Below, piece after piece: positions 1,408 through 59,415 of a stretch of 64,000 nucleotides of DNA. Position numbers and translations under genes: made by a program. Location of the stretch: IMG/VR virus record IMGVR_UViG_3300033153_015063, positions 62,001-126,000 of that record; one strand, 5' to 3'. Numbering within the stretch: position 1 is the first letter of the stretch; every line of letters starts with the position of its first letter. The notes beneath the pieces were generated by a model. The model saw only the letters and a program-made list of their open reading frames with translations. It did not search any database and was not told the DNA's origin.

Positions 1408-1424
1408 AACAGTAAAAAGCGTAA
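1408..1424 (-). promoter_or_regulatory. 17-bp upstream motif TTACGCTTTTTACTGTT
   Basis: one of 10 copies; 15 nt upstream of a TATA box. Confidence 0.7.
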
Positions 1425-1425
1425 T

Positions 1426-2079
1426 TTACTCGAATGAGTTTGCGACGTAGCCTGCCAGGGCACCCAGCAATCCAGCTACGATGGCTGCATTGATAGTCAC
1501 CTCGTAGATTAAAGGTGGCCAGTAGATGATTATCAATATTGGAAATATAACCGTAAAGGCCATGAGTGGCCTACCGACATCGACACCAAGTCGAACCATG
1601 AAGAATAGTAGAAAAACTCCGAAAACCAACGAAAGGAAAGCGACCTCTGTTCTTTCGACCTCGATTGGGGCGAGGTAGACAAACAGGAGTGCCAATGCAA
1701 TTGTGAAGATGAATGGATATACTTTCAGGTCTTTTCCCGGGCCCCCATCTTTTATTTTCAGTTGCTCGTAGTGAAAAAGAAGGAAACCACCTATCCCGAA
1801 GTACATACCAACTGAACCGCAGAACAACACCAGATTGCCCTCCATCCCCTGTGATACCCAGTACCAGAAAGGCAGCACGATGAACGTCGTCATGGTCCCA
1901 AGTCTCCATGGCCCACCCCACGTCTCAAGTGTGCCATAGACAACTACCGCCGCCAACATACCTATGACCACACACAGCATGTTGATTTGCCTGGTGAAGG
2001 GGAACACCATGAGTGCTATTGCTACACCGATGACGACCACGAGATAGTGCATCTCCTCGTTTTTGTCCACTAAACTCAA
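1426..2079 (-). CDS. polytopic membrane protein
   Basis: about 8 hydrophobic segments; overlaps the upstream stop codon. Confidence 0.75.
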   Translation of the reverse strand: MSLVDKNEEMHYLVVVIGVAIALMVFPFTRQINMLCVVIGMLAAVVVYGTLETWGGPWRLGTMTTFIVLPFWYWVSQGMEGNLVLFCGSVGMYFGIGGFLLFHYEQLKIKDGGPGKDLKVYPFIFTIALALLFVYLAPIEVERTEVAFLSLVFGVFLLFFMVRLGVDVGRPLMAFTVIFPILIIIYWPPLIYEVTINAAIVAGLLGALAGYVANSFE

Positions 2080-2279
2080 CTCCTTTGGCGTCTATAGACA
2101 TACAGTCCATAAAAAAGTATCGCTAGCCCGACGCCAAGGGCTGCGTAGGGGTTGATGGTATCGAGGTAATCACGGATAGGGTCTGCGATGAGTTCAATGC
2201 CGAACGAGATAAGGATACCGACCAGGATGGCTGTAGTGACCCATTTCCTCGAAGAACTATCTCCGCCTAACTGTTCCAT
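2076..2279 (-). CDS. small 2-TM membrane protein
   Basis: two hydrophobic helices and a basic tail; part of an operon. Confidence 0.7.
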   Translation of the reverse strand: MEQLGGDSSSRKWVTTAILVGILISFGIELIADPIRDYLDTINPYAALGVGLAILFYGLYVYRRQRS

Positions 2280-2854
2280 ATCTTCCGCCTCATCCTGTTC
2301 TCATGGAAATCTCCGCCGATTCCCCTGCCGATTTCCATAAACTCCGGCCGGCCCTCATCGTCTATGTCACTTGGGGCACGTTCCACGATGATACCACGCT
2401 TCCCCTCGACAGAAGTTTCTTCCATAGGATGCATCGAATCGTATTGAGACACGCTTTGTTTCAGGTCGTCAAAATCCTCTTCGTCAGATGACATAATAAT
2501 CAAACAGTCCTCGTCGCCTTTCCTGACAACAGCGAGTTCATAGTCATCATCACGGTGAACTTCAATAACCTCTCCTTCATCTTCCAGGTCGCCGGTATCA
2601 TGGCCCATCGCCCTCATCATCTTTGCCATCATCAGGGCCTGAAATGCCTGTTCTGACTCTGGTGTAACCTGAGTGTCGGACTGGGGTTCTCCGGGACCTC
2701 TGGTCTCTTCCACTATGGCATCAGGAGGGCCCTTCCATCTATCCTTATTGTAGATAGTCCCATCTTCGTTGACCCGGCCGAGGTACTTGTCGGCTCCTTT
2801 CTCGGGGTCGTACATATAGGCGTACCAACTGTCTTTAACGGGTTGTTTCCACAT
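2267..2854 (-). CDS. acidic protein with a divergent leader-like N-terminus
   Basis: SWYAYMYDPEKGADKYLGRV resembles the Y-x-Y...Y-x-G hairpin of the leader family. Confidence 0.7.
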   Translation of the reverse strand: MWKQPVKDSWYAYMYDPEKGADKYLGRVNEDGTIYNKDRWKGPPDAIVEETRGPGEPQSDTQVTPESEQAFQALMMAKMMRAMGHDTGDLEDEGEVIEVHRDDDYELAVVRKGDEDCLIIMSSDEEDFDDLKQSVSQYDSMHPMEETSVEGKRGIIVERAPSDIDDEGRPEFMEIGRGIGGDFHENRMRRKIWNS

Positions 2855-3656: not shown

Positions 3657-3672
3657 CTATATCACTTACATC

Positions 3673-4949: not shown

Positions 4950-4958
4950 CTCAACACC

Positions 4959-6236: not shown

Positions 6237-8602
6237 CCATAGGCAGTCTGTCCAAAGCTCACATCACTTACAGGGTCAAAGACGCCCAACGCAGCAAATA
6301 CGAATAGCACCACTCCAAGGATTATTGGTATGAGTGCGATGTCGGAACCCTGGGAGTCACTCTTTGATACGAAGTACTGGAGACCAACTCCAACGAGTAG
6401 GAACATCAGTGCTATTGAAGTCCAGATGTGTTGGAGTATGAGGCCGAGGAATACCCCAAGTGCTATGATAACCCCACCTATGACAATGACACCAATGGTG
6501 AACAAATTGCCGGTCTCAGAAGTTTCCTCGATGTCGGTTTTACTCCTTATCAGGAATCCACCGAACACCACCCCAGCACCAGCTACTATGAAGTAGGCCT
6601 GGGTTCTACCCAGGCCCTCTGGCACGAAAGCCCTGATGACACCAAGTACGATGACGGCGACGACGCCTACCAATGCGGCCAGGCGGGCCCACTCATCTGT
6701 AGCCTTTGGTAGTTGAACGGGTAATACAAAGTAGATTACAATACCAGCGATGATACCAGCAATGAGTAGCCAATAGGTGTCAAAGAACGTTGATATGGTG
6801 CTGCGGGCTGTGACCACCTCGCCACCTTTGAAGCCCTCGAATATCTGCATGGAGAGTGCCCGGCCCGTGATTGTGTAGTCGCCTTCGCCAGTCGCCTCGA
6901 TGGTGAATTTTTTCGAATATTTGTTGTGGGTCCCATCATCATAGACATCCTCGTACACATCGGTCTCGACACTATCTTTCAACTCTACAGCACCTTCTAC
7001 CTCGTAGCTGAGAGAGATGCTTTCGTGATGCCCGATAACGGTGTAAGTGACAGTGATTTCTTTGGTGACATCCTGGACCATCTCAGATGGTGCAGAGATA
7101 ACAACGAGAATATCAGGGGCCTCCCGCTTGATGAAATACGACTTTGAATTTTTACCACCACCATCGTCATACACACTTATGCCGATACGTACCTCTGGTT
7201 CTGATTGGCAGGTCAGGGTTGCGGTCGCCTCACTACCAGACACACTCTGGGTGATTGCGGCCTGTTCATCACATATCAACTCTATTCTGGTCAAACTCTT
7301 TCCAGTATCGGGTTTAGCGGTGATGTCAAACCCTGAGTTGGTCCCTTCATTCGTGATAAGTGTGCCAAGAGTACCAACCAATATCGGTCTGTCCTGAAAG
7401 TAAGGCGGATGGTCCCACTCTATTGCCGTGATTGTGGGTTCAGAACCACTGGCCGATAGAACGGCCAGAGTTAATGTCTCGGTGACGGTCTGTACACCTG
7501 GTTCCGATGCCGTGATAGTCAAAGTGAGACTACCAGCCGAGGTTGGTAACCAATTGAACGTGAGTTTGTATATCTGCGTTCCAAGTGTTGCAACAGCCTT
7601 CAGATTGCTGATGGAAGAACCAAGACTGTCAGATGCAGACCAGTACGCCGAACAAGTTCCGTCACAGCTCATGTCGGTACTCAGAGAGTTGTGGAAGTTG
7701 ACCTCGACAGACCTGGTATTACCAGAGAACACGTCATAGTCCGTCCCAGGTTTCTGGCCGCTTGCCCACGAGAAGGTACCAACGTCAGAGGTCCGATGAA
7801 TTATAAGGTCATCTACCCAGGAATTTCCGAATCTGTAGTTTGTGTAGTGTTCTAGACCATACTTACTCATCTCGATTCCAATCTGCTTGATAGTGAAGCT
7901 ATGTGAGATTGTAGCGAGTCTCCGTCCGTTCAAGTCTACGCTGAAGGTTCCACTTGAGACCAATACCTGGATATGGTTCCAGTCACCAGCCACATTACCG
8001 CTACCATCTACGTTACCATTACCCCATTTCAGGGTGGTTTGAATACCCTGTATAACTTTTGTCTCAACTACATTATTATTTGTGTGGCTTCTGACAAAAA
8101 GATTAGAAGTTCCAAGATGACGGTAGAATCTAATACTTATCCCATCTTCGGGACTAGTGATACCAAAATTTGAAGGGCCAAGACCTTGCCTCAATTGATG
8201 TTCTTCAAAATAAACCCCAAACGTGTTGTCATGTACCTGACTCTGCCAGAGAAAGTATCCATCGAAGATAAATTCATCAGTGGCAGAAGCGGTGTTATAG
8301 TCAAAAACAGCGTCCACAATACCACCACATTCGATTGCGTTTTTGCCACTAAGACCAACACAAGGACTTGTGACAATGGCAATGTTATCGGTTCCACGAG
8401 ATGCCAGAGACGTAGTTCTCTCGATATAAGGGCCATACCCCTGAGAATCCGATTTGAAATCACCGTCGGTAGATACCCAGACCGTTGCTATTTCAGGGTT
8501 GCTGACCTGTCCATAGATGTTACAAAAACCCACCATGATGATGAGTATAACAACCATTCCAGCAATGTAGACTGGTTTTGTCAATTTACTCATATTATTC
8601 AC
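6230..8602 (-). CDS. surface protein with lectin/LamG-like and Ig-like regions and about 6 C-terminal TM helices
   Basis: N-terminal anchor; GDWNHIQV...VDLNG pattern; Ser/Thr-rich beta segments. Confidence 0.75.
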   Translation of the reverse strand: MNNMSKLTKPVYIAGMVVILIIMVGFCNIYGQVSNPEIATVWVSTDGDFKSDSQGYGPYIERTTSLASRGTDNIAIVTSPCVGLSGKNAIECGGIVDAVFDYNTASATDEFIFDGYFLWQSQVHDNTFGVYFEEHQLRQGLGPSNFGITSPEDGISIRFYRHLGTSNLFVRSHTNNNVVETKVIQGIQTTLKWGNGNVDGSGNVAGDWNHIQVLVSSGTFSVDLNGRRLATISHSFTIKQIGIEMSKYGLEHYTNYRFGNSWVDDLIIHRTSDVGTFSWASGQKPGTDYDVFSGNTRSVEVNFHNSLSTDMSCDGTCSAYWSASDSLGSSISNLKAVATLGTQIYKLTFNWLPTSAGSLTLTITASEPGVQTVTETLTLAVLSASGSEPTITAIEWDHPPYFQDRPILVGTLGTLITNEGTNSGFDITAKPDTGKSLTRIELICDEQAAITQSVSGSEATATLTCQSEPEVRIGISVYDDGGGKNSKSYFIKREAPDILVVISAPSEMVQDVTKEITVTYTVIGHHESISLSYEVEGAVELKDSVETDVYEDVYDDGTHNKYSKKFTIEATGEGDYTITGRALSMQIFEGFKGGEVVTARSTISTFFDTYWLLIAGIIAGIVIYFVLPVQLPKATDEWARLAALVGVVAVIVLGVIRAFVPEGLGRTQAYFIVAGAGVVFGGFLIRSKTDIEETSETGNLFTIGVIVIGGVIIALGVFLGLILQHIWTSIALMFLLVGVGLQYFVSKSDSQGSDIALIPIILGVVLFVFAALGVFDPVSDVSFGQTAYGW

Positions 8603-10743
8603 ACCCCCAACCTGATAGGAACAAAATAAGTATCTATCAATATAAATCCGACGATGATACCAGCCACCACTACCACCGTATATATGGTGAATCCTGCAAA
8701 CTGTTCTGGATACAGTTTAAGCAACCCGAAGAGTGTAATAGCAGCGATGATAACTCCTATCAGAACAGGGCCAAGGAATATCTCTGAAAGTGTTGTGGCA
8801 GCCCGATCCTCCTTCTCGGTTTTGATGACGAGTGCCAGGGTCTCAGTATCAGTGTTGCCGCTTTCGTCCTCGACAGAGAGAGATACCACGTAGTCTCCAG
8901 TGCCAAATTGGTGAGTGACTACCTCTCCATAGGAAAGATTGGTCCCGTCTCCGAAATCCCACTCATAGAGCTCAATGTTGTCCTCGGCGTCTATGGAGAG
9001 TGACGAGAAGGTAATTGTGCTGCCCACGATAGCAGTATAGCTTCGTCTTGGTTCGTCGGACGGAGTTATACTGGTGGTAATACCTATTTTTGCACTCGGT
9101 TCAGTGTCGATGAACTCGATAAAGATAGGTTGTGTAGTGTCGGTGATGTCGAACTCATCTCGGACGAAGAGAGTCACTCTGTATTCCCCGTAATGGGGAG
9201 CTCGGAAATCAAATACTGCTTCGGATGACGTCACGATGTTGCTGTCCTCATCAGTAAGAATCCATGCATATTCGAGTATGTTGTTATCTGCTGGGTCGCT
9301 GTCGCCATCATTATCGGAAGTGGAAAGAGACCCGTCCAGCTCCACAGGACCCAGACCATTGATGGGCGTGGTAACCTGTTTTATAACCGCTGTAGGACCA
9401 CCATCAACCACGACAATAGGGCGACTTCCCAGGCCAACGGTTTGGGTGTTGCTAACCTGCCCAGAATCGTCAGTTACCTCAGCGGTAGGATTAAAGTTCC
9501 TAGTCGATGTATAGATGTGGTGATAGATGTGGGGGATACCTTGAGACTGAGCAACGAGCTCATAATCATCCCAGACACCATCTCCCTCCCAATCCCACTT
9601 GATCGACACTACGTCCTGTATAATAGTGGCACCACTGATACCAGATGTCTCTCCATCTATAAAGATTGCCGAGAACACTATAGTATCATCCTTCAGAACG
9701 TATGTGATACCGATGTTTGTCGAGGTCACTGACGATGTTATAGAGAAATACACCGCAGGAGGTTTATTGATGTTGGGAGTATGCATTGGGGCAATATCTA
9801 TGGCCTGGTCACCACAACCTCCAGTCGAGATAATATAAGTTGTGTCTATAAAACCATCACCATTGGTATCAGAACCCTCGATTTCAGTCAGTCCATTCTT
9901 ACTCCAGTAATTACCCATCGGGGCTTCAAGGATAGTTATTATCTCGCCATCATCCTCTACATCTATGTCATCGACGACGCTGAAGGTCACTGTTCCCCAG
10001 CCAACACCACCGGATACTTCCTGGACATTGTTAATGAATCTATTATAAAAGAAGTTGAGATTTGTAGTTCCAGATGGATGAAAATCTCCAAGAGAAACAG
10101 CCTTGTTGCATCCTTCAATAGTATTATCCACGAAGTTGATGTCATTGGTACTTTCATCGAGTGAAATACACGATGATGATGCAGACGAGGACCCCATGAT
10201 TTCATTACTCATCACTGTAATAATAGTGTCGTCACCATAATCAGTGTATCTTATTTCGATGTTCTTTTCGCATTCGTAGAGAACGCTGTCACCAATATAG
10301 ACTTCGGTCTCGGCACCACCTTCGATTTTGATGCAGGTGGTTTGCTGGCTGATATCTGCATCGGTAATGGAACCCTTCGCACCTGCATTGAAGAGGATTC
10401 CGTCACCCCAATCTGATTGGTCAACACCAGGCACACCGGTGTCCTCGGCCCCGAAGGTTGCCCCACTACGGACTATCAACTCTCCGTTGACCTCGATATG
10501 GGCACCCTGCGAGATTACGACATGTGAACCCACAATCTCAAGGGACCCATCTATCATAAGGTCTGAAGAGACCAGGTAGACGTTGCCCTCCTCCCAGGTC
10601 CTATCATCTGTGATACTTGCCGGGGCCACGATAGTGGTGGTCTTGTAGACGTCGGTGGGGTCAGTGAGGTAGAAGGCTGCACCTACAAGGATTAAAGCCA
10701 TGATGAACATCAGCATCTTATTATTATCTGCCATTAAAGACAC
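8599..10743 (-). CDS. surface protein with NosD-like beta-helix and PKD domains
   Basis: GNYWS...DTNGDGFID, WDWEGDG and YEWDFGDG motifs; N-terminal anchor and two C-terminal TM helices. Confidence 0.8.
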   Translation of the reverse strand: MSLMADNNKMLMFIMALILVGAAFYLTDPTDVYKTTTIVAPASITDDRTWEEGNVYLVSSDLMIDGSLEIVGSHVVISQGAHIEVNGELIVRSGATFGAEDTGVPGVDQSDWGDGILFNAGAKGSITDADISQQTTCIKIEGGAETEVYIGDSVLYECEKNIEIRYTDYGDDTIITVMSNEIMGSSSASSSCISLDESTNDINFVDNTIEGCNKAVSLGDFHPSGTTNLNFFYNRFINNVQEVSGGVGWGTVTFSVVDDIDVEDDGEIITILEAPMGNYWSKNGLTEIEGSDTNGDGFIDTTYIISTGGCGDQAIDIAPMHTPNINKPPAVYFSITSSVTSTNIGITYVLKDDTIVFSAIFIDGETSGISGATIIQDVVSIKWDWEGDGVWDDYELVAQSQGIPHIYHHIYTSTRNFNPTAEVTDDSGQVSNTQTVGLGSRPIVVVDGGPTAVIKQVTTPINGLGPVELDGSLSTSDNDGDSDPADNNILEYAWILTDEDSNIVTSSEAVFDFRAPHYGEYRVTLFVRDEFDITDTTQPIFIEFIDTEPSAKIGITTSITPSDEPRRSYTAIVGSTITFSSLSIDAEDNIELYEWDFGDGTNLSYGEVVTHQFGTGDYVVSLSVEDESGNTDTETLALVIKTEKEDRAATTLSEIFLGPVLIGVIIAAITLFGLLKLYPEQFAGFTIYTVVVVAGIIVGFILIDTYFVPIRLGV

Positions 10744-15490: not shown

Positions 15491-15528
15491 TTACGCTTTT
15501 TGTGGTTTAAATCAGGCAAACTTTATAT
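15491..15528 (+). promoter_or_regulatory. upstream motif plus TATA box driving the tRNA-like RNA at 15551
   Basis: TTACGCTTTTTGTGGTT at 15491-15507; TTTATAT at 15522. Confidence 0.65.
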
Positions 15529-15550
15529 TTCAGAGCTCGAAGGGAAGTGT

Positions 15551-15688
15551 GCGGTGGAAGCTCAACTGGTTGGAGCCCCCCGGCCGTCATACCGGGGGAG
15601 GAGCAGAAGCCCGGAGCGAAGTGGCTGGTACCTAGGCTATACCAACCACAAGCAACACCGGGAGGCGGTTCAAATCCGGCCCACCGCA
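15551..15688 (+). ncRNA. tRNA-like RNA (138 nt) with a CAT-containing loop and a ~60-nt variable-arm insertion
   Basis: acceptor GCGGTGG/CCACCGC; D arm GCTC/GAGC; stem CCCCCGG/CCGGGGG with loop CCGTCATA; T loop TTCAAAT; own promoter. Confidence 0.7.
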
Positions 15689-15757: not shown

Positions 15758-15796
15758 TTACGGTTTTTACGGTTATACATGAGCAACCATTATATA
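15758..15796 (+). promoter_or_regulatory. upstream motif plus TATA box
   Basis: TTACGGTTTTTACGGTT at 15758-15774; TTATATA at 15790. Confidence 0.7.
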
Positions 15797-15819: not shown

Positions 15820-16380
15820 ATGTCTCTTAAGAAGCTCTCTATTGGTGATGTTTTCTATCTGAAAAGCCCCACCAGGGAAAATAGCCCTGATGATTATCAG
15901 ATTTTGAAGGTCAAACAAATCACAAACTACGCTCACCCAAAAGGAGACCGTAATGTAACCGAGATGAACGGGGATGACATAGTTGACATCACCTTCGAAG
16001 TTCCACTCCACGAAAATACCTACGGCGACAAACCTTTCCGCCCTGAGCATGACTTCTATGATGTTTCGCTGTCTGATTTGGATTGGCTGGAAATCGACAA
16101 AGCACCCGTCCCAACATCCTGTACGCTTGGAATTATGGGTCGCTATGGAAAGGACGAGGAGTGGACTGAGTTGAAGGGCAAGAAGAACCGCACAGTCCAC
16201 AAGTCCGGCGAGAACGGGTCACCTGTCTGTGGGTCGAAGGCAACATCACACATCTTTAAACCCGATGGCCGATGGGACCCCTGGAACAAGCACTGGTGTA
16301 AGGAGGAAGAGAGTGTTACCTGCTGGGTGCCATCATTCCGGGAACCCACATGTAAAAAGTGCTTGAAGAAAGTTGAATAA
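15820..16380 (+). CDS. hypothetical protein with a C-terminal zinc-finger-like motif
   Basis: H...CG...TCKKCLK; motif-bearing promoter. Confidence 0.75.
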   Translation: MSLKKLSIGDVFYLKSPTRENSPDDYQILKVKQITNYAHPKGDRNVTEMNGDDIVDITFEVPLHENTYGDKPFRPEHDFYDVSLSDLDWLEIDKAPVPTSCTLGIMGRYGKDEEWTELKGKKNRTVHKSGENGSPVCGSKATSHIFKPDGRWDPWNKHWCKEEESVTCWVPSFREPTCKKCLKKVE

Positions 16381-16481
16381 CATCTCCTTCTTACTTTTTA
16401 CGGTTTTTATGGTTAATTAAACAGAAACTATACCCATGCCCCAAATGTGGTGGGAGTGGGTTAAAATATAACCACTATAAA

Positions 16482-17689: not shown

Positions 17690-17728
17690 TTACGCTTTTT
17701 ACAGTTCTCAAGCAACAACCATTATATA
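17690..17728 (+). promoter_or_regulatory. upstream motif plus TATA box
   Basis: TTACGCTTTTTACAGTT at 17690-17706; TTATATA at 17722. Confidence 0.7.
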
Positions 17729-23699: not shown

Positions 23700-23762
23700 C
23701 CTTTAGCCAGAAAACAAACCCTCCCGAACTCTTTATATACTCAACACCCATTGTATTCCTTG

Positions 23763-24452
23763 ATGACCACCGTAGAGATACCTGAGGGTTCAGGGAATAG
23801 ATACCGCTATGATTATGAAGAGGGAGCTACGGTCTACAAGGGGCCGGTCGGCAATGCACCAGCCCTGGATGAGGAGGAATTTCTCTCTTTGATGGAAATG
23901 GGCATTCCCGAAGGGAGGATAGCCACCGAAAGAGATGGGATATACCGGAAAATCAAGGGTAACTACTACGACGACGACGGAAACCGCATCAAGGTATTCG
24001 TAAAGTACGGTTTCACCCAGTTGGGCAACCAGGAACCATACTTCTCCATCACAGCCGAGGCAGGGTCCAACAAAACCGGTTGGTCCAGTGGGATGCAGCA
24101 TGAAAAAATCGAGAACGCTTTCGAGGAGTTCCCAGAGCTCACCAGGTGGCATCTTACAAACATCAGTAATGGTCCGATGCACTATAATGCCAACGCCAAA
24201 CACCATTGGAAAAAAGATAAGCTTGACGCCTTCAAGAGTACCATCGTGTTCGGGGCCCTACCAGACGATGATATGGAAGACATCGAGTTTATGATGGACC
24301 AGTCTCCCGACGCCTTCCTTAACGATAGACTGCCAAAGTTGATGGAACAGTTTCGAAAGGACATGAAAAAGTTCAATGTTCCACCACCAAGAGGACAGAG
24401 AACACGAGAAGCTATCGACGTTGTGATGGCAGCAGCCTACGAAGACTGGTAA
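23763..24452 (+). CDS. leader-module protein with phage-type hypothetical cargo
   Basis: MTTVEIPEGSGNRYRYDYEEGATVYKGPVG; TTTATATA at 23732; leaderless start. Confidence 0.85.
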   Translation: MTTVEIPEGSGNRYRYDYEEGATVYKGPVGNAPALDEEEFLSLMEMGIPEGRIATERDGIYRKIKGNYYDDDGNRIKVFVKYGFTQLGNQEPYFSITAEAGSNKTGWSSGMQHEKIENAFEEFPELTRWHLTNISNGPMHYNANAKHHWKKDKLDAFKSTIVFGALPDDDMEDIEFMMDQSPDAFLNDRLPKLMEQFRKDMKKFNVPPPRGQRTREAIDVVMAAAYEDW

Positions 24453-34081: not shown

Positions 34082-34195
34082 CAAGGAATACAATGGGTGT
34101 TGAGTATATAAAGAGTTCGGGAAGATTCTGCATCTCAAATCGGCCGGTGCTGCTTCTCAAAAGAGTCCTACCCAACTTACCCAGCTACCTCCTTT

Positions 34196-34271
34196 TTACG
34201 CTTTTTACAGTTAACCCAGCCCAAACTATATAAAGACCAAGATGCGGGTAAGAGTTAGGTGATGTATGATG
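34196..34271 (+). promoter_or_regulatory. motif + TATA + UTR + RBS unit, copy 1 of 3
   Basis: 45-bp TATATAAAGACCAAGATGCGGGTAAGAGTTAGGTGATGTATGATG at 34227-34271. Confidence 0.9.
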
Positions 34272-36416: not shown

Positions 36417-36529
36417 CCATAAAAGGGAGTATTTAACCATAGGGGGAAAAAAGATACCCCCCTGTACCATGCTGTAATGAAGCCATCTGCAGTATATAAA
36501 GACTATAGAGATTGAGGCTGGAAATATAT
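36417..36529 (+). repeat. 113-bp inverted repeat, left copy
   Basis: exact reverse complement of 51888-52000. Confidence 0.9.
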
Positions 36530-36953
36530 GTATGACTACAAAATCTCTATATAGATTCAAAAGAGATTTATACACGACTGATATAAAACTACATCGTCTG
36601 TCAACGTATTAGAAACAGATACGTTGAGAAGGTAAACTACTTATATTAGTTGTACAAATACACACAACTACCAATTTCGTCCTGGTGCGGAGTCCTCATC
36701 TCTCCGCACCCACTTTTTTCCCTCTACTCCCATCATCCCCATATACCCCCCTAACCAAAAAGGGGCCCTAATACCCTATATATAATATAGGACCAATAAT
36801 AATAATAATAATAAAAATAGACCCCAAGCTACCATTGAGCTGCTTTCGCTCAGTTTCTTTCAGGCTGCTTTCATATATAAACCCCACGACGCCACATCCA
36901 TCTTACGAACCAAAAACCTTTTAAAACCATAGGCCTTTAAACCCAACGATAGA

Positions 36954-42340: not shown

Positions 42341-42406
42341 AATATATGTGGGAGTTCTTAAAGATTTCTGGAGTTCAACCGTAAAAAGCGTAATGATACT
42401 CGGAAC

Positions 42407-43143: not shown

Positions 43144-43641
43144 CTACTTCCCCTTCCTGATGGCTACAGAGAGTGGTTTCCAACCATGACCATCTCTCCA
43201 TTTATTGATTACCACAATGGCTTTTTTCTTCTGTTCATTCGTCATCTTCGAGGTCTGTTCCACAATACCCTTCAATCTCATCGAACGTGCATGTATGGTG
43301 CCCCTGTTAACACCTTCATCCATGTCCTCGTCGAGTTCGATGAGTATGTTTTTGACCTCACGAACATCCGAAAGACCCTTCGGGGCAAAATCTCTGACCT
43401 GCCCAGGTCTACCGAGATAGACATTCTCACCACCTGGTACTACAATCCTCTTCCCTTCGACGTATGTGACACGCCTATCCCTTTCTCTAACACCCACCAC
43501 CTTCATAATCTCCAGGAACTCCCCCTCGTCCAGGGCTGGTGCTTCTCCTACAGGCCCCTTGTACTGAGTTTGTTGTGTGGCCTGGTCATAGACATACCTG
43601 TATTTATTCCCTGAACCTGGAGGGATTTCAACTATGGACAT
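43144..43641 (-). CDS. leader-module protein
   Basis: MSIVEIPPGSGNKYRYVYDQATQQTQYKGPVG. Confidence 0.85.
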   Translation of the reverse strand: MSIVEIPPGSGNKYRYVYDQATQQTQYKGPVGEAPALDEGEFLEIMKVVGVRERDRRVTYVEGKRIVVPGGENVYLGRPGQVRDFAPKGLSDVREVKNILIELDEDMDEGVNRGTIHARSMRLKGIVEQTSKMTNEQKKKAIVVINKWRDGHGWKPLSVAIRKGK

Positions 43642-43702
43642 TACAGACACCTAGGATGATTATGGATGAGCTGAGGAGTATATAAATGTCCCGTTAACTT
43701 AT

Positions 43703-44402: not shown

Positions 44403-44612
44403 TTATTTCTTATCTGGAGAATGAGATACATTCTCCCTGAACAACCATTCTCCATCCCAACCAAAATCGACCCAGTAATCATCACATCCTTCACAGTAGT
44501 AGATGTATTCACCTACGTTATCACCGATTGGTTTTCCCTCTTCGTTAACTGGATGCCAGTGACAACAAGTACACAGACCACAACCACCAGGGCACCCCTC
44601 ACTATCACTCAT
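44403..44612 (-). CDS. small Cys-rich protein
   Basis: ATGA coupling to the leader gene; 7 Cys. Confidence 0.6.
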   Translation of the reverse strand: MSDSEGCPGGCGLCTCCHWHPVNEEGKPIGDNVGEYIYYCEGCDDYWVDFGWDGEWLFRENVSHSPDKK

Positions 44613-45112
44613 CGTAACCAGGAAGATGGCTCAGGATTTTCCCACTTATCCTTAACCTTCTCTACCAATTCATCATCTCTTTTCTGGACCAACTCAGATA
44701 CCTTCATCCCTTTCTCGGTCAGTCCGCCCCAATATTCAGCGTAAGAATATTCTTTAAACATAGTTCTGATTTTCCCTCCAGTTAATCTCCACTCCATCAG
44801 ACCTTTTCGTTCCATTACCTTATAGGTGACCATTGGATAAAGGATGTGTTGTCCTCTACTTATATGGAAGTTAGTGTCTGAATCTACATCCCACCCTTTT
44901 CTCCCAAACAGTATAAGAACTTCCTTCTGTGTAGGGGAAAGTTCTTTGTAGATTTCTTCGATTTCTTTATTCTCAGTACCCATCCCCTTCAAGAACTCAG
45001 CCTCTCCCAGCTCAGGAGAATCCCCGACCGGCCCCTTGTACTGTGTCTTGCCGCCTTCATATTCGTAGCGGTATCTATTCCCTGAGCCTGGTGGAATCTC
45101 TACAGTGGTCAT
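44609..45112 (-). CDS. leader-module protein, possible winged-helix cargo
   Basis: MTTVEIPPGSGNRYRYEYEGGKTQYKGPVG; LSPTQKEVL...LTEKG. Confidence 0.85.
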   Translation of the reverse strand: MTTVEIPPGSGNRYRYEYEGGKTQYKGPVGDSPELGEAEFLKGMGTENKEIEEIYKELSPTQKEVLILFGRKGWDVDSDTNFHISRGQHILYPMVTYKVMERKGLMEWRLTGGKIRTMFKEYSYAEYWGGLTEKGMKVSELVQKRDDELVEKVKDKWENPEPSSWLR

Positions 45113-45651: not shown

Positions 45652-46224
45652 CTACTCCTCGGCCTCGAAATCCTCTTCCTCAAGGTCAGCAAGTCGATCC
45701 TCTATCTCCTCTAATCTATTGTCAATAGCATTATCCTCTTTTTTCAGTTGCAGGACCTTTCTTTTCAGGTCTGTGACATGCGTCCTATTCTCAGCAGCAT
45801 TGTCACTCACAGATTCTATTTCAAATTCTATGATGCTGAATGCTTTGTTCTGTTCGTTGTCGATGACTATAATAGCGTCGACAACGTTCTCTATCTTCTC
45901 CTGGTCGGTTTGGGTTTCCTCTATGTCGTCTTCTATCTCTTCGAGTTGATTGACGACCCGGCCGGCAGCATCTTTGAAACCCCCTACACCCTCCAATACT
46001 TTCGGCCTCGGTGGATCAAAATCTCTCCAGTCATCGACCCACTCCACAAAATCTCCGACCCCGACAACTACATCATCGTCAATTCCCATCATCTCCAGGA
46101 ACTCCTCCTCATCCAGGGCTGGTGCATTGCCGACCGGCCCCTTGTAGACCGTAGCCTTGGTCTCAGCATCATAGACGTATTTGTATCTGTTACCGCTTCC
46201 AGGAGGGATTTCGACTATGGACAT
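45652..46224 (-). CDS. leader-module protein with acidic coiled-coil cargo
   Basis: MSIVEIPPGSGNRYKYVYDAETKATVYKGPVG. Confidence 0.85.
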   Translation of the reverse strand: MSIVEIPPGSGNRYKYVYDAETKATVYKGPVGNAPALDEEEFLEMMGIDDDVVVGVGDFVEWVDDWRDFDPPRPKVLEGVGGFKDAAGRVVNQLEEIEDDIEETQTDQEKIENVVDAIIVIDNEQNKAFSIIEFEIESVSDNAAENRTHVTDLKRKVLQLKKEDNAIDNRLEEIEDRLADLEEEDFEAEE

Positions 46225-46280: not shown

Positions 46281-46688
46281 CTAAAACTCCACTTGAAGCT
46301 CGTTGTAATAGTCCCGAGGGCTTTTCGGGGAACGGCCGGCAATCAAATCACTGTTGAATAAATCGACCATATCACCGATAGTATCAGCAGCCCTATTTAA
46401 ATAATCTTCACAATCTGTATCACAATCTATAGGTAAATCTAACTGTTTTAACTGTTCAGATGTTATATAGTCATTGATATATGCATTATCGTCCTCTGCA
46501 AATTGTGAAAAGAAATATGTTAATCCAGACATCTGATAATGGTTCACCGTATTCCTGAACATCTCCAGGAACTCCCCCTCGCTCATCTCAGGAGAATCCC
46601 CGACCGGCCCCTTGTAGACCGTAGCTCCCTCTTCATATTCATAGCGGTATCTGTTACCTGAGCCAGGAGGGATCTCGACAATGGTCAT
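46281..46688 (-). CDS. leader-module protein with AT-rich cargo
   Basis: MTIVEIPPGSGNRYRYEYEEGATVYKGPVG. Confidence 0.85.
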   Translation of the reverse strand: MTIVEIPPGSGNRYRYEYEEGATVYKGPVGDSPEMSEGEFLEMFRNTVNHYQMSGLTYFFSQFAEDDNAYINDYITSEQLKQLDLPIDCDTDCEDYLNRAADTIGDMVDLFNSDLIAGRSPKSPRDYYNELQVEF

Positions 46689-46824
46689 CAAGGAATAGAA
46701 GGGGTGGTGGGTATAAAAATGTGATGGTGGGGTGTGGTGGGTGCCCCGGTTCCTTCATTTCTATCTTCCATTTTCCATCACTACTCAATTTTTTCATTTA
46801 ACTTACAACTAATTATATGAATGG

Positions 46825-50530: not shown

Positions 50531-50883
50531 TTTACGCTTTTTACAGTTGAACAATCGTAAGACCGTTGTTGTCACAATCGGTCCTATTTCAATAGTTTAA
50601 TATTCTCTGAAGTAGTTGACGCTATCAAGAACGTTGGTGGGAGTATCAGACTGTAACCCTATGATATGTCCAGGGTTTCCAAAACCACACCCGCTACTTT
50701 TCCACCATGGCCGTCAAGCTACCCCAGGCCATCCTTTCCTGGTGGGTTTACCCGGATACGATTGTTAGATATAAACTGTCTCTTATAAAAATGTATCTTG
50801 TTTGCATCAAACGTATTGGTGAGATGTTTATAAAGGAACTGTAAAATATCAGGCATCTTATAAAAGTCCTGTACCATCACGTG

Positions 50884-51042
50884 AGAGCTTTATATACTCA
50901 CAAGTAGGCCAGAGCTTTATATACTCACAAGTAGGCCAGAGCTTTATATACTCACAAGTAGGCCAGAGCTTTATATACTCACAAGTAGGCCAGAGCTTAT
51001 ATACTCACAAGTAGGCCAGAGCTTTATATACTCACAAGTAGG
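50884..51042 (+). repeat. 6 x 27-bp tandem repeat AGAGCTTTATATACTCACAAGTAGGCC
   Basis: units start at 50884, 50911, 50938, 50965, 50992 (one T missing) and 51018 (partial). Confidence 0.95.
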
Positions 51043-51083
51043 TTACGTTCTTTACGGTATTGGCCTAAGATACGTTTCTAATG

Positions 51084-51800
51084 TGTAGTAGTAGTGTAGT
51101 AGTAGTAGGTAGTAGTGTAGTAGTAGTAGGTAGTAGTGTAGTAGTAGTAGGTAGTAGTGTAGTAGTAGTGTAGTAGTGTAGTAGTAGTAGGGTAGGTAGT
51201 AGTGGAATTAAATGTGAAGCACTGTGGATGGGGTAGGTAAGATAGGTAGGTAACGGAATTAAATGTGAGACAGTAGATGCCGTAATAATAGTAATAGTAG
51301 TAATAACTGTAACAGGAAAATTAAATGTTATCAGTCAGTACACAGTTGTTTGGCACTATGGTAACCAAATTAAATGAAATCAGTTCACTCTCAAAAGCGT
51401 AATTTTTGAAATTCTACCATCCCGTACACACGTGTATGGCAAGGAGATAGTTAGTAAGTAGTAGTAGTGGTAGTAGATAGGGTAGATAGGGTAGTAGAAT
51501 TAAATGAAATATGGTAGGTAGTAGTAGGTAGTAGTAGGTAGTAGTAGGTAGTAGTAGTAGGTAGTAGTAGGTAGGTAGGTGGTAGGGTCAGAATTAAATG
51601 AAATAGGGTAGTAGGGGGTAGTAGTAGGGTAGTAGGGGGTAGTAGTAGGTCAGAATTAAATGAAATAGGGTAGTAGGGGGTAGTAGTAGGGTAGTAGGGG
51701 GTAGTAGTAGGGTAGTAGGGGGTAGTAGTAGATAAGGTAGGTAGGGTAGGTGGGTCAGAATTAAATGAAAGTAGGTATGATGTATCAGTAGTGGTAGTAG
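51084..51800 (+). repeat. GTA/GGTA low-complexity tract with 8 AATTAAATG boxes; candidate origin or terminal region
   Basis: + strand is G-rich and C-poor; no ORFs. Confidence 0.8.
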
Positions 51801-51887
51801 CTAATGGTTGTAATTTCTGTTAGTTATACTGGGCTTATGTCCAAGGAATTATATAAGAGTAAGACCTATAAAACCCCTATAGGCCCT

Positions 51888-52000
51888 ATATATTTCCAGC
51901 CTCAATCTCTATAGTCTTTATATACTGCAGATGGCTTCATTACAGCATGGTACAGGGGGGTATCTTTTTTCCCCCTATGGTTAAATACTCCCTTTTATGG
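51888..52000 (-). repeat. 113-bp inverted repeat, right copy
   Basis: exact reverse complement of 36417-36529. Confidence 0.9.
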
Positions 52001-52134: not shown

Positions 52135-52389
52135 TTATTCTACGATCTTTCTGGGGTTACCATCATCCCCAAGTGTATATCTGTTACCAGATCCATAAGG
52201 AAATTCAATCACCCCGGTGTTTTTCTTGCGATGGATCTTACATTTTGGGCACCACGAGAGTTTTCCTGCATCCCTCAACTTGGTGTCACACTCGGGGCAC
52301 CAACCCTGGATTAGTTCCAATGCACCTTTCAAAGCAGTCATACTGACTTCTCTGCCCACTCTTTTTGTCCTCCTATACTTTGGACCCAT
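52135..52389 (-). CDS. zinc-ribbon protein with a leader-like motif at the C-terminus
   Basis: CPEC...CPKCKIH followed by VIEFPYGSGNRY. Confidence 0.7.
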   Translation of the reverse strand: MGPKYRRTKRVGREVSMTALKGALELIQGWCPECDTKLRDAGKLSWCPKCKIHRKKNTGVIEFPYGSGNRYTLGDDGNPRKIVE

Positions 52390-52712: not shown

Positions 52713-53168
52713 TCAGTCATCTGGGCGTGGGCCTGGGCCTTCCCACCACCAATAGTACATCACACCATCATCTCCCTCTCGTTCATCTCGAAACCACTTC
52801 GTTCCACAAACAGGGCAATAGATCACACTCCTTATCTCGTGGGCTGATGCTACCGCACCAAGGCAACAAAGGTTATCGCCTCCAAATTGGGATTCTTCGA
52901 AGGTCTCACTATTGAGACAATGTTTACAGGTAACCTTTTTTACATCAATGGTGCAAAGAATGTCCTTTGGAGATACACCACAAGAGACAGTATTCTCACT
53001 TGTCCAATAGTGGACCATTGGTCCCTTCTGATTAACAGGTTTTGATGGGTCGTCACTTTCTTGTATTGCACTACCTTTGACATGGATCTTACATCTCCGG
53101 CACCAATACGCTTTACCTACCTCTTTTAGATTATCCCCACAATCGGGACAGACGTTAGTCATCCTCAT
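52713..53168 (-). CDS. multi-zinc-finger protein
   Basis: CPDC...CRRCKIH, TCKHC and CPVC. Confidence 0.7.
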   Translation of the reverse strand: MRMTNVCPDCGDNLKEVGKAYWCRRCKIHVKGSAIQESDDPSKPVNQKGPMVHYWTSENTVSCGVSPKDILCTIDVKKVTCKHCLNSETFEESQFGGDNLCCLGAVASAHEIRSVIYCPVCGTKWFRDEREGDDGVMYYWWWEGPGPRPDD

Positions 53169-55899: not shown

Positions 55900-55969
55900 A
55901 CATCACCTAACTCTTACCCGCATCTTGGTCTTTATATACTTTCAGGCCAAACAACCGTAAAAAGCGTAA
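55894..55969 (-). promoter_or_regulatory. motif + TATA + UTR + RBS unit, copy 2 of 3
   Basis: 55894-55938 is identical to 34227-34271; motif at 55953-55969. Confidence 0.9.
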
Positions 55970-56602: not shown

Positions 56603-56648
56603 CGACTACTGGAGAATGTTTTTAAACTATTCGTTCGTTGTCCGTCCG

Positions 56649-57644: not shown

Positions 57645-57727
57645 CTCAAGTCCTCAGTATGAAAGAAAATGAAAAAGAGAGTTAATAAAGAGAGTCCCTG
57701 GGAAAGGAGTAAAAACCAGTCGGAGAT

Positions 57728-58045
57728 TCATAGTCTGGTTTTTCTGATACTTCGTAGGAAATCCAGACTTTTCCGTGTCAATCGAAAAACTTCCATCTCC
57801 ATCTCTATCAGATACCCATCTACGATAAGTTTTTCGAGGGTAGTAGAGTGGAAGGTTTGACCTTCGGGACGCCAACATTTTTCCCCAAACTCCCACATAA
57901 GTTGTTGGCGGTCAACATCCAACATATAATCTCCAGATAATATATTGTCGATGTGTATTAGATTGATACGATAGATAACGTCGTATAGGATTTTTTCATC
58001 TATATTATCGGATTCAAAAGAATCCAGACTTTCACTTCCTTCCAT
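57728..58045 (-). CDS. small protein, possible winged helix
   Basis: TLEKLIVDGYL...FRLTRKS. Confidence 0.6.
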   Translation of the reverse strand: MEGSESLDSFESDNIDEKILYDVIYRINLIHIDNILSGDYMLDVDRQQLMWEFGEKCWRPEGQTFHSTTLEKLIVDGYLIEMEMEVFRLTRKSLDFLRSIRKTRL

Positions 58046-59345
58046 TTTTCAGGACCTTCACGTAGTTGACAATGGTCTCCTTATTTCCGTTGTAGCTGTT
58101 CTGCTTCTTGACCTTGGCAGAGATGGTAACGATTGTTCCTTCCTGGATGTTGTCCCGATTCTCATTGGCGAACCACTTGACGGATCGACCAGTGGGGTTA
58201 TCATCGTCATCGACCTCGTCCATGATATGAAGCGTCCAGGCACCATACCCACTCTGGCCCGACCTGTGTGCCTTGACATGGACCCGCACACTGACCTTAT
58301 CACCTTCTTTTCCGAGGAATCCATTGGCTGTGTTGGTGGGTGTCTTCGAGGCAAGGCTCTGGGCGTTCTCACGGGTGTAGGCGGAAACGATGCTGGCCAC
58401 GATACCGAGAGACCTCCGGGTGAGGGCGATGGATTTTGAAGCCGCATTCATGTTCCTTTCGTAGTCCGACATGGGTTTCAGGGCCCGGCGGGCCCAGTCA
58501 AGGGCATCGGCAGCGAGTTTCTGGTCGGCGTCGGTGGGATTCCACCGTTTCCATTCACTCTTGGTCATGGTCTCGGGGGGGTCGAAAAGGCGGAGTGCGA
58601 TATTGGCCGTTGAGTGGACACCATCCTCCTCTGCCTTCCATTTCGGCATCCAGCCGCCGATACGGATGCAGACAGCGACAGCGGTCAGATAGTCTTTGGT
58701 GTCAATCTCCCAGTAATCGTGGCTATACTCACCCATGTCATCAATGGACCGCATGACCACGTTGATGGTCTTCTGATAGTTGGCGAGGGTCTTGGGGTCG
58801 ATGCCACCGAGATAATCTCGGACGCACTTCGATCCAACCTGCTTGTAGACGCCGGTGTCCTCTTCGAGAACCACGTAGGTGATCTTCCGGGCGGATCTAC
58901 CTGCCTTCTTGGTCCCACAGTGGTCACACATAAACCGACCCCGGAACGTCTCGGGGATGACCTCGCCAGGCACAGAGTAGAACACCTCGGTACCCTTTTT
59001 ATCCTCGGTCTTGAGTTTCTCGATGGACCCGATGAGCTGGAACCCCTCGATATGGGGTGCCTCACCGGTTATTCGAACAATGGCCCACTGGCAGAGTTCT
59101 GCGTAATAATTGCTGGGCTTTCCGTTCACCCTGATGGGACACACCTGGTCCTTGGCCTTTCCCCTGAAGTCCTTTTCCGTCCACTTTTCGATGAGTGTCA
59201 TGGTGGGCTCAGGGAATCCGTACTTCAGGGCCTTCTTTGCCTGCTGCCCGATTTTCTTCTCCAGGGTCTCCAGATTATACTGGGGGATGAGGAAGAGTTC
59301 AGGGTCCTTCCCAACAAGTGTTTCGGCGGTTTCATAATCCATCAT
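58032..59345 (-). CDS. phage-type protein with a zinc motif and a C-terminal OB-fold-like region
   Basis: CDHC...QVGSKCVRDYLG; ISAKVKKQNSYNGNKETIV. Confidence 0.8.
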   Translation of the reverse strand: MMDYETAETLVGKDPELFLIPQYNLETLEKKIGQQAKKALKYGFPEPTMTLIEKWTEKDFRGKAKDQVCPIRVNGKPSNYYAELCQWAIVRITGEAPHIEGFQLIGSIEKLKTEDKKGTEVFYSVPGEVIPETFRGRFMCDHCGTKKAGRSARKITYVVLEEDTGVYKQVGSKCVRDYLGGIDPKTLANYQKTINVVMRSIDDMGEYSHDYWEIDTKDYLTAVAVCIRIGGWMPKWKAEEDGVHSTANIALRLFDPPETMTKSEWKRWNPTDADQKLAADALDWARRALKPMSDYERNMNAASKSIALTRRSLGIVASIVSAYTRENAQSLASKTPTNTANGFLGKEGDKVSVRVHVKAHRSGQSGYGAWTLHIMDEVDDDDNPTGRSVKWFANENRDNIQEGTIVTISAKVKKQNSYNGNKETIVNYVKVLKNGRK

Positions 59346-59415
59346 ACATCACCTAACTCTTACCCGCATCTTGGTCTTTATATAGTTTTGGCTGGGTTAA
59401 CTGTAAAAAGCGTAA
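59340..59415 (-). promoter_or_regulatory. motif + TATA + UTR + RBS unit, copy 3 of 3
   Basis: one mismatch to 34196-34271. Confidence 0.9.

What the first reader, a model, noticed from the sequence alone, without database searches (positions are those of the whole stretch)
1408..59415. 17-bp motif at fixed distance upstream of TATA boxes defines a regulon
Seen: TTACG(C/G)TTTTTAC(A/G)GTT-like sites at 1408(-), 15491, 15758, 16398, 17690, 34196, 42377(-), 50532, 55953(-) and 59399(-). Eight lie 14-15 nt upstream of a TATA box in the same orientation; 16398 and 50532 have no clear one. The motif is a TTAC direct repeat with 9-bp period. Knowledge: archaeal activators such as Ptr2 bind just upstream of BRE/TATA. 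Inference: an activator-controlled early class covering the ArdC-like, Toprim/MazG and two ncRNA units. Leader-module promoters lack it and form a second class.
Basis: partly seen in the sequence, partly recalled or inferred. Interest (0 to 1): 0.7.

Follow-up and report, generated by a model that had tools for sequence, protein, structure and literature searches.

The report
Upstream motif marks one viral promoter class
A near-invariant 17-base sequence sits exactly 14 bases upstream of the TATA box at about 36 promoters of a 243-kb virus-like element that most likely infects an archaeon, marking one of its two promoter classes and probably serving as the docking site for a dedicated transcription regulator.

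Summary
All ten sites are at the stated coordinates (13 hits at up to 3 mismatches, 0.29 expected). The window lies in a complete 242.6-kb circular or terminally redundant IMG/VR virus record with 38 sites, all co-oriented with a downstream gene or tRNA.

In 33 sites the TATA box starts 14 nt after the motif. 27 of the 28 AAA[CG]TATATAAA boxes in the genome carry the motif at that spacing. The motif is 93% identical between sites, the spacer only 36% and the upstream flank 26%, so this is a constrained two-block promoter and not duplicated DNA.

A second class, CTTTWWAWAC placed 29-32 nt before start codons with no Shine-Dalgarno (at least 54 genes), lacks the motif. That spacing, tRNA 5' ends about 30 nt after the TATA start, the absence of any RNA polymerase, TBP, TFB or sigma gene, and PolB affinities all point to host archaeal transcription.

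A relative (PolB 55-57% identical) has four copies of TTACTCTTTTTACTCTT. Both half-sites changed together.

Best reading: a binding site at about -61 to -45 for a lineage-specific factor, more likely an activator, controlling roughly a third of the genes. 'Early' timing, the gene labels and the binder are unproven, and no RNA data could be obtained. The closest known case is the halovirus HF2 intergenic-repeat promoters.

The parts
1386..1424 (-). Class A promoter: motif TTACGCTTTTTACTGTT (1408-1424), 14-nt spacer, TTATATAA box. SD GGTGAT and ATG of a 58-aa ORF follow.
15491..15529 (+). Class A promoter: motif TTACGCTTTTTGTGGTT (2 mismatches), 14 nt, TTTATATT. It drives the tRNA-like gene.
15551..15688 (+). 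tRNA-like gene with acceptor, D and T arms. 82 nt stand in place of the 18 model positions of the anticodon arm. Its 5' end lies 29 nt after the TATA start.
   Evidence: Rfam RF00005, 25.3 bits, gathering score 29; ARAGORN did not call it
15758..15796 (+). Class A promoter: perfect motif TTACGGTTTTTACGGTT, 14 nt, TTATATAC. The ATG of the 186-aa ORF (15820-16380) lies 31 nt after the TATA start, so the mRNA is leaderless.
16398..16436 (+). Motif TTACGGTTTTTATGGTT, 17 nt after the stop codon of the 186-aa ORF. Only a degenerate TATACCCA at the +14 position. Function uncertain.
17690..17728 (+). Class A promoter: perfect motif, 14 nt, TTATATAC. Only a short ORF or RNA follows, running antisense towards the 3' end of the 574-aa gene on the minus strand.
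34196..34234 (+). Class A promoter: perfect motif, 14 nt, AAACTATATAAAG. The shared leader gaccaagatgcgggtaagagttAGGTGATgtatgATG precedes the 251-aa ORF (34266-35021). The divergent neighbour is a leader-module gene.
42355..42393 (-). Class A promoter variant: perfect motif, 14 nt, TTTAAGAA. The next ORF of at least 40 aa starts 201 nt after the motif end (about 187 nt after the TATA start).
50532..50548 (+). Perfect motif without a TATA box, 2 nt (one intervening base) after the stop codon of a plus-strand operon, at the edge of a 1.2-kb non-coding repeat region.
55931..55969 (-). Class A promoter: perfect motif, 14 nt, AAAGTATATAAAG, with the same leader and SD. It heads a 61-aa ORF followed by 357-, 437- and 151-aa ORFs.
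59377..59415 (-). Class A promoter: perfect motif, 14 nt, AAACTATATAAAG, with the same leader and SD. It heads the 437-aa ORF (58032-59345).

Best explanation
The 17-bp motif TTACGSTTTTTACRGTT consists of two TTACGS half-sites in direct repeat, 9 bp apart, joined by a T-tract. It is the upstream block of a composite promoter: motif, then a variable 9-10 nt spacer, then a purine-rich BRE (G)AAAs, then TATATAAAG. A 243-kb virus-like element that relies on its archaeal host's RNA polymerase, TBP and TFB uses this promoter about 36 times.

With transcription starting about 30 nt after the first base of the TATA box, the motif covers about -61 to -45, directly upstream of the BRE.

Shown: its existence, number, orientation, exact spacing, near-invariance against a variable spacer, exclusive coupling to one TATA/BRE subtype, absence from the second (leaderless, 'leader-module') promoter class, and concerted change of both half-sites in a related element.

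Inferred: the motif is the docking site of a sequence-specific protein that binds as two equivalent units in tandem. From that fixed position the protein contacts TFB/TBP or the polymerase and switches this promoter class as a block. I consider activation more likely than repression. The factor is more likely encoded by the element than by the host. If so, class A would be a delayed rather than an immediate-early class.
For: Abundance and placement:
- Enrichment is 13 hits against 0.29 expected in the window.
- There are 38 sites genome-wide, all co-oriented with a downstream ORF or tRNA.
- TATA starts at exactly +14 in 33 of the 38.
- 27 of the 28 AAA[CG]TATATAAA boxes in the genome have the motif exactly 14 nt upstream.

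Constraint rather than duplication:
- The information profile has no signal upstream of the motif, about 1.9 bits at each of the 17 positions, a low-information spacer, then BRE/TATA.
- Pairwise identity is 93% in the motif, 36% in the spacer (26 distinct spacers among 35 sites) and 26% in the flank.
- First genes behind the motif are mostly not paralogous.

Archaeal-type initiation:
- At least 8 class A and at least 54 class B genes have their start codon 28-33 nt after the TATA start with no SD.
- The tRNA-Leu 5' end lies 33 nt after the TATA start and the tRNA-like gene's 5' end 29 nt after it.
- The element has no TFB, TBP, RNA polymerase Rpb2_6 or NADFDGD-type polymerase signature motif, and no sigma70 region 2.
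- The best cultured PolB matches are all haloarchaeal tailed viruses. A Methanospirillaceae chromosomal PolB is about 30% identical.

Lineage specificity:
- The exact motif plus TATA is absent from other IMG/VR contigs.
- In 185,579 species genomes it occurs only as 3 single hits, all in bacterial MAGs.
- The relative contig Ga0452204_000775 (PolB 55-57% identical) has 4 copies of TTACTCTTTTTACTC(T/C)T in the 41 kb read, against 5e-5 expected. Two of them have a TATA box at +14.
- Each element lacks the other's variant.

Position logic: archaeal activators (Ptr2, TFB-RF1, EarA, the ara-box factor) bind immediately upstream of the BRE, whereas repressors overlap or follow BRE/TATA (PMC5512572, PMC5569661).
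Against: - No transcription data. No run could be listed, so transcription start sites are inferred from spacing only.
- No binder was identified. Pfam finds only sub-threshold winged-helix and Zn-ribbon candidates.
- Class A BRE/TATA looks consensus-like rather than weak, whereas known archaeal activators usually rescue weak BRE or TATA elements (PMC5512572).
- In HF2, mutating the analogous upstream 'alpha' block did not change basal promoter activity (PMC8707807).
- 28 of 38 sites lie just after a co-oriented gene and contain a T5 tract. One site (50532) has no TATA. A terminator or insulator role therefore cannot be excluded.
- Two sites in G000 and two in the relative have longer motif-to-TATA distances (26, 29, 46, 47 nt).
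- The host domain rests on indirect evidence. GyrA/GyrB, topoisomerase IA and a class II CCA-adding enzyme are bacterial-type.
Confidence: 0.57

Rival explanations
1. The motif is an operator for a repressor or temporal shut-off factor. A factor bound at -61 to -45, possibly spreading or looping, keeps the class A promoters silent during a carrier or lysogenic state or in a given phase. This would resemble SSV1 F55 or SvtR, which nucleates upstream of its target.
For: - The class A core (purine-rich BRE plus TATATAAAG) looks intrinsically strong.
- HF2 class I repeats are active without viral factors, and the upstream alpha block is dispensable for basal activity.
- SvtR binds about 80 nt upstream of its target TATA.
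- In 10 divergent arrangements the motif lies between a class A and a class B TATA, so one bound factor could affect both.
Against: - Most archaeal repressors overlap or follow BRE/TATA.
- The strict 14-nt spacing and single orientation suit a defined contact with the initiation complex better than occlusion.
Confidence: 0.2
2. The motif is, or doubles as, a terminator or insulator. Its T-tracts (cTTTTACGCTTTTTAC) would stop read-through from the upstream operon just before each class A promoter.
For: - 28 of 38 sites lie 1-120 nt after a co-oriented gene end, many within 30 nt.
- Site 50532 has the motif directly after a stop codon with no TATA.
- Archaeal intrinsic termination uses oligo-T (general knowledge).
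Against: - 10 sites face a divergent gene, where nothing needs terminating.
- The non-T positions are as invariant as the T positions.
- The exact 14-nt spacing to TATA has no explanation under this reading.
- Most gene ends followed by a gap (101 of 144) have no T5 tract at all, so the element does not generally rely on such signals.
- The relative changes G to T and G to C in both half-sites in concert, which is protein-like recognition.
Confidence: 0.12
3. The motif has no separate function. It is part of a promoter cassette that spread and is kept uniform by recombination or gene conversion.
For: - Several promoters share the whole roughly 80-bp cassette including the leader (for example window 34196, 55953, 59399).
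- Divergent cassettes with a leader-module gene recur.
Against: - The spacer and flanks are variable (36% and 26% identity) while the motif is 93% identical. There are 26 distinct spacers.
- The motif is retained, with a concerted variant, in a relative at 55-57% PolB identity.
Confidence: 0.06
4. The host is a bacterium, and the motif is an extended -35 region (TTTACR) placed 17 bp upstream of a TATATA -10 element of a sigma-70-type promoter.
For: - TTTACR-N17-TATATA fits the sigma-70 consensus spacing (read directly from the sequence).
- Several genes are bacterial-type: GyrA/GyrB, topoisomerase IA, class II CCA-adding enzyme.
Against: - Start codons without SD, and tRNA 5' ends, sit 28-33 nt after the TATA start in more than 60 units. 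This is the archaeal TATA-to-start distance, not the 7 nt expected after a -10 element.
- The second class has no -35-like element.
- PolB affinities are archaeal.
- The tRNA-like gene has a 64-nt insertion, too short for a bacterial group I intron.
Confidence: 0.05

Closest known systems
Halovirus HF2 (Haloferacalesvirus) intergenic-repeat promoters, class I (58 bp, alpha/beta/gamma blocks) and class II (PMC8707807)
   Same: - An archaeal virus with no RNA polymerase of its own.
- Two sequence-distinct classes of repeated intergenic promoter cassettes.
- Class I has a conserved block upstream of the BRE (alpha), a TATA block (beta) and a block around the start site (gamma). Here these correspond to the motif, the BRE/TATA and the GTAAG region.
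- The repeats are conserved in related viruses.
- The authors propose virus-encoded, sequence-specific factors acting on the repeats for temporal control.
- HF1/HF2-group viruses are also the best cultured PolB matches.
   Different: - No sequence similarity. HF2 alpha, beta and gamma strings are absent from this element.
- 7 plus 2 repeats in a 77-kb genome there, against about 38 plus at least 54 here in 243 kb.
- Here the upstream block is a 17-bp tandem half-site element separated from the BRE by a variable spacer of fixed length.
- The host is probably a methanogen-type archaeon, not a haloarchaeon.
- No experimental data exist here.
Archaeal upstream activator sites: Ptr2 (M. jannaschii), TFB-RF1 (P. 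furiosus), EarA sites of the fla promoter (M. maripaludis), the Sulfolobus ara-box
   Same: - Located immediately upstream of BRE/TATA.
- EarA sites are repeated short units.
- These factors act by recruiting TBP or TFB.
   Different: - Those are host regulons of one to a few promoters, usually with weak BRE or TATA elements.
- Here about 36 near-identical sites sit in front of a consensus-like core.
- The binder is unknown.
Phage T4 middle promoters (MotA box plus AsiA) and promoter-class motifs of giant eukaryotic viruses
   Same: A virus-wide short motif at fixed distance from the core element defines a temporal class of dozens of promoters read by the host polymerase after a virus-made factor appears (from general knowledge).
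   Different: This is a bacterial sigma-appropriation mechanism or eukaryotic-virus machinery. It is an analogy of logic only.

Membership tests
Archaeal upstream activating site (Ptr2 / TFB-RF1 / EarA type) | Lies upstream of and adjacent to BRE/TATA of an archaeal-type promoter | tested here: met
   The motif ends 14 nt before the TATA start (about 8 nt before the BRE) in 33 of 38 sites. The archaeal-type TATA-to-start distance holds in more than 60 units.
Archaeal upstream activating site (Ptr2 / TFB-RF1 / EarA type) | Bound by a sequence-specific activator that recruits TBP or TFB | not testable with these tools
   No binder identified. Needs EMSA or in vitro transcription.
Archaeal upstream activating site (Ptr2 / TFB-RF1 / EarA type) | Target promoters have a sub-optimal BRE or TATA that needs help | tested here: inconclusive
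   The class A core is (G)AAAs plus TATATAAAG, which looks close to methanogen consensus. The host consensus is unknown.
HF2-type intergenic-repeat viral promoters | Repeated conserved intergenic cassettes that contain BRE/TATA and fall into distinct classes | tested here: met
   Class A has 38 sites. Class B (CTTTWWAWAC) has at least 54 genes at leaderless distance.
HF2-type intergenic-repeat viral promoters | Conserved in related viruses | tested here: met
   Four variant copies in 41 kb of a relative at 55-57% PolB identity. Leaderless class-B-like promoters occur in the relative and in two small contigs.
HF2-type intergenic-repeat viral promoters | Sequence homology to the HF2 repeats | tested here: not met
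   HF2 alpha, beta and gamma strings have 0 occurrences. The resemblance is in architecture only.
HF2-type intergenic-repeat viral promoters | Demonstrated promoter activity and mapped start sites | not testable with these tools
   No sequencing runs listed.
Bacterial sigma-70 promoter | Transcript start about 7 nt after the -10 element, with -35 and -10 elements 17 bp apart | tested here: not met
   The spacing TTTACR-N17-TATATA fits. However, leaderless start codons and tRNA 5' ends lie 28-33 nt after the element, and the element has no sigma70_r2 gene.

The most novel reading that the evidence does not exclude
A jumbo archaeal virus-like element runs about a third of its genes from a private promoter grammar. 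A virus-encoded factor would bind two tandem TTACGS half-sites at -61 to -45 and co-evolve with them (TTACGS in this element, TTACTC in its relative). It would act as a lineage-specific specificity factor for the host's TBP/TFB/RNA polymerase. This would be an archaeal counterpart of T4 MotA-type promoter-class switching, with a recognition code readable from half-site covariation.
Probability: 0.35. Interest if true: 0.75.

Novelty: new variant of a known kind. Interest (0 to 1): 0.58.

Why it matters
Very little is known about how large archaeal viruses schedule transcription, and only a handful of archaeal activators have been characterised.

This element offers about 36 near-identical copies of one upstream site. 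The geometry is exact, a motif-less second promoter class in the same genome serves as an internal control, and a relative carries a concerted half-site variant. Together these make a clean, directly testable system for finding the factor and for learning how it talks to TBP/TFB.

The composite promoter could also serve as a strong, switchable part for archaeal genetics. The promoter grammar itself (TATA 30 nt before leaderless starts) is useful evidence that this unclassified 243-kb element infects an archaeon.

Tried and rejected
- RNA evidence: two searches for public sequencing runs (8 kb and 1.4 kb queries) listed none, so no reads could be laid.
The bare 17-mer in IMG/VR gave 17 single hits, roughly the number I would expect by chance.
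- PolB as a single query found no close relative in viral contigs.
- The record behind the relative contig is not held for whole-record search, so it was walked in 10-kb steps and 41 of its 117 kb were read.
- The jumbo Methanoperedens ECEs (PMC13444090) were considered and rejected as identity. They have different GC content, carry Orc1 and have a metabolic gene load.
- Function of motif-driven genes: Pfam and PHROGs gave almost nothing. Hits were a helicase, DUF6011, CobT-VWA and a MoxR AAA+, so no functional or temporal theme could be drawn.
- Virus hallmarks: no Terminase_6N/6C or HK97 capsid Pfam hit, so 'tailed virus' is not shown. No PCNA or PriS either.
- Host: GyrB is about 48-50% identical to diverse bacteria and gives no host clue.
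- Binder: an atlas search with the 186-aa protein from the motif-dense region gave nothing. Small-protein Pfam hits were all below the curated cut-offs.
- No complex prediction was run, because there was no candidate with a prior high enough to justify it.
- I first took the repeated TATATAAA cassettes without the motif for a third class. They are class B leader-module promoters read from the other strand.
Full report
**1. Observation**

The pattern TTACGSTTTTTACRGTT with up to three mismatches occurs 13 times in the window, against 0.29 expected from dinucleotide-preserving shuffles.

Read in the motif's own orientation, eight sites are followed after 14 nt by a TATA-like octamer. Site 16398 has only TATACCCA at that place. 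Site 50532 has none.

TTACG occurs at motif positions 1-5 and 10-14, so the direct repeat with 9-bp period is correct.

**2. The element**

The window is bases 62001-126000 of a single 242,596-bp contig. IMG/VR holds it as a virus record with direct terminal repeats and a CheckV completeness of 100%. Its first and last 64 nt are identical. GC content is 46.6%.

Identified genes are a family B DNA polymerase, class II ribonucleotide reductase, topoisomerase IA, GyrB and a GyrA-like subunit, SNF2 and other helicases, a ThyA-like domain, a class II CCA-adding enzyme, CobT-VWA and MoxR AAA+ proteins, 11 DNA methyltransferase paralogues and four tRNAs.

I found no TFB, TBP, RNA polymerase Rpb2 domain, NADFDGD-type signature motif of the polymerase's double-psi beta-barrel (DPBB) domain, sigma-70 region 2, PCNA or PriS. 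I also found no Terminase_6N/6C or HK97 capsid Pfam match. So it depends on host transcription. Its virion type is not established.

**3. The motif is element-wide and tightly coupled to one core promoter type**

Scanning the whole contig gives 38 sites with up to 2 mismatches. Every one points towards a downstream ORF or tRNA. In 33 of them the TATA element starts 14 nt after the motif.

Conversely, 27 of the 28 occurrences of AAA[CG]TATATAAA in the genome have the motif exactly 14 nt upstream.

An information profile of 35 aligned sites shows:
- nothing upstream of the motif except a weak CTT;
- about 1.9 bits at each of the 17 positions, with only positions 6 and 14 varying;
- a low-information spacer;
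- then (G)AAAs-TATATAAAG, a conserved C, a GTAAG-like patch about 20-24 nt after the TATA start, and nothing further.

Mean pairwise identity is 93% in the motif, 36% in the 10-nt spacer (26 distinct spacers), 80% in BRE/TATA and 26% in the upstream flank. The first genes behind the motif are mostly not paralogous.

This pattern is what selection on two separate blocks at a fixed distance produces. It is not what recent duplication produces.

**4. A second promoter class, and the archaeal ruler**

Genes without the motif very often carry a different box, consensus aaatCTTTWWAWACtC (expectation-maximisation position weight matrix). Of 86 genes with a hit of at least 10 bits upstream, 52-54 have it 33-38 nt before the start codon, counted from the start of the matrix. 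That places the TATA start 28-33 nt before the ATG. These genes have no Shine-Dalgarno sequence.

Genome-wide, 41% of such boxes are followed by an ATG at that distance, against 11% at random positions.

This class includes topoisomerase IA, the GyrA-like gene, SNF2, and the 'leader module'. The leader module is a promoter plus a conserved 45-residue N-terminus (MTTVEIPPGSGNRYRYEYEEGATVYKGPVG..PELSEEEFLEMM) shared by about 35-40 otherwise unrelated proteins.

At least eight class A genes are also leaderless, with their ATG 28-31 nt after the TATA start. The rest have GGTGAT and an ATG about 42 nt after it.

The 5' end of tRNA-Leu lies 33 nt after its class A TATA, and that of a tRNA-like gene 29 nt after its own.

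A sharp distance of about 30 nt from the box to leaderless starts and RNA 5' ends is the archaeal TBP/TFB geometry. A bacterial -10 element would sit about 7 nt from the start.

Two further observations point the same way. All of the top cultured PolB matches are haloarchaeal tailed viruses. A chromosomal Methanospirillaceae PolB is about 30% identical.

Together these make an archaeal host the best reading, although several genes are bacterial-type.

On this ruler the motif spans about -61 to -45.

**5. Relatives**

The exact motif plus TATA is absent from other IMG/VR contigs. Among 185,579 species genomes it is found only as three single hits, all in bacterial MAGs. So it is not a promoter element of any sequenced host genome.

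The closest relative found is JGI contig Ga0452204_000775 (PolB 55-57% identical). In the 41 kb I could read, it has four copies of TTACTCTTTTTACTC(T/C)T, all on one strand, against 5e-5 expected. Two have a TATA box 14 nt downstream, and two have TATATAAAGT 46-47 nt downstream.

Both half-sites have changed from TTACGS to TTACTC. Neither element contains the other's version. Concerted change of two equivalent half-sites is what co-evolution with a protein that reads each half-site in the same way would give.

The relative and two small contigs also have leaderless TATA-to-ATG promoters.

**6. Mechanism**

[quoted passage not shown] Repressors usually overlap or follow the core promoter (PMC5512572, PMC5569661).

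The motif's position, single orientation and exact spacing therefore fit a factor that makes a defined contact with the initiation complex. I rate a protein-binding regulatory site as likely, activation as more likely than repression, and a virus-encoded factor as more likely than a host one.

Three caveats apply:
- The core promoter looks strong, not weak.
- In HF2 the analogous upstream block was dispensable for basal activity.
- A factor made by the element would make this class delayed, not immediate-early.

A terminator or insulator role is possible as a second function. 28 of 38 sites follow a co-oriented gene, the motif has a T5 tract, and site 50532 lacks a TATA.

That role does not explain several facts:
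- 10 sites face divergent genes.
- The non-T positions are invariant.
- The spacing to TATA is fixed.
- The half-sites covary between the two elements.

**7.

By nearest upstream promoter on the same strand, about 90 of 293 called genes lie behind class A and about 163 behind class B.

Pfam and PHROGs give no significant ArdC, Toprim or MazG match for the window genes concerned. No functional theme emerges.

'Early' cannot be assessed, because no sequencing run could be listed.

**8. Comparison and novelty**

The nearest described system is halovirus HF2. It has two classes of intergenic-repeat promoters. Class I has an upstream alpha block, a TATA block and a start-site block. The repeats are conserved in relatives and were proposed to be read by virus-encoded factors (PMC8707807).

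The architecture here is the same but the sequences are unrelated. The copy number here is several-fold higher. The upstream block is a defined tandem half-site element with lineage-specific covariation.

I therefore class it as a new variant of a known kind.

Noticed in passing
window 23751-24452(+), 24549-25646(+), 33278-34138(-), 35344-36255(-), 43144-43650(-), 44609-45112(-), 45652-46224(-), 46281-46691(-), 59862-60683(-), 61010-61759(+), 61808-62476(+); about 38 genes genome-wide: About 35-40 proteins share a 45-residue N-terminal module (MTTVEIPPGSGNRYRYEYEEGATVYKGPVG..PELSEEEFLEMM) fused to unrelated C-terminal parts. Almost all are expressed from the leaderless class B promoter. Outside this element only 3 proteins among 5.8 billion carry the module, plus one gene in the relative contig. 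It may be a packaging or targeting tag. One member has DUF5661.
   Followed up: partly
window 50549-51750: A 1.2-kb non-coding region. It holds six tandem 27-bp units, each containing a TATA box that reads as one in either direction (AGAGCTTTATATACTCACAAGTAGGCC). GTA-rich repeats and spaced GGAATTAAATG-like iterons follow. A perfect motif without TATA (50532) and two degenerate motif copies (51043+, 51386-) flank it. The cumulative GC-skew minimum lies just before it. This is a candidate replication origin or control region.
   Followed up: partly
window 15551-15688 (+): A tRNA-like gene with good acceptor, D and T arms, but 82 nt where the 18 model positions of the anticodon arm should be. 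That is an insertion of about 64 nt, which could be an archaeal-type intron or a long extra arm. ARAGORN missed it and Rfam scores it 25.3 bits, below the 29-bit cut-off. T-arm-like remnants upstream of tRNA-Pro and tRNA-Ala suggest more unrecognised tRNAs.
   Followed up: partly
genome 2537-3520, 26623-27498, 32137-32997, 35816-38386, 158409-159149, 178067-179155, 184588-186234, 205213-206040, 241014-241760 (outside the window): Eleven paralogous DNA methyltransferases (N6_N4_Mtase) in one element. Several begin with the same MIDRKM N-terminus.
   Followed up: no
window 52135-52389(-), 52713-53168(-); genome 17706, 43403, 48772, 159178, 161260: A family of proteins with an N-terminal zinc ribbon, CPxCG-x7-GK-x2-[FW]C-x2-CK-x-H. 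Several sit in class A units. They are candidate DNA binders. Pfam matches are only sub-threshold.
   Followed up: partly
window 36449-36575(+) and 51842-51968(-): Two copies of a roughly 80-bp element (aaaaagataccccc...ctgcagTATATAAAgactatagagattgagg...). It has a class-A-like TATA but no motif, and an inverted repeat follows. Both copies lie in large non-coding gaps. They may be small RNA units.
   Followed up: no
window 8599-10743(-), 26471-32729(+), 17856-19580(-): Large proteins with PKD, fibronectin type III, carboxypeptidase-regulatory-like and 17 thrombospondin type 3 repeats. Unannotatable 790-aa and 1490-aa proteins lie next to them. Together they look like an adhesin or structural module. 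None is driven by a class A promoter.
   Followed up: no
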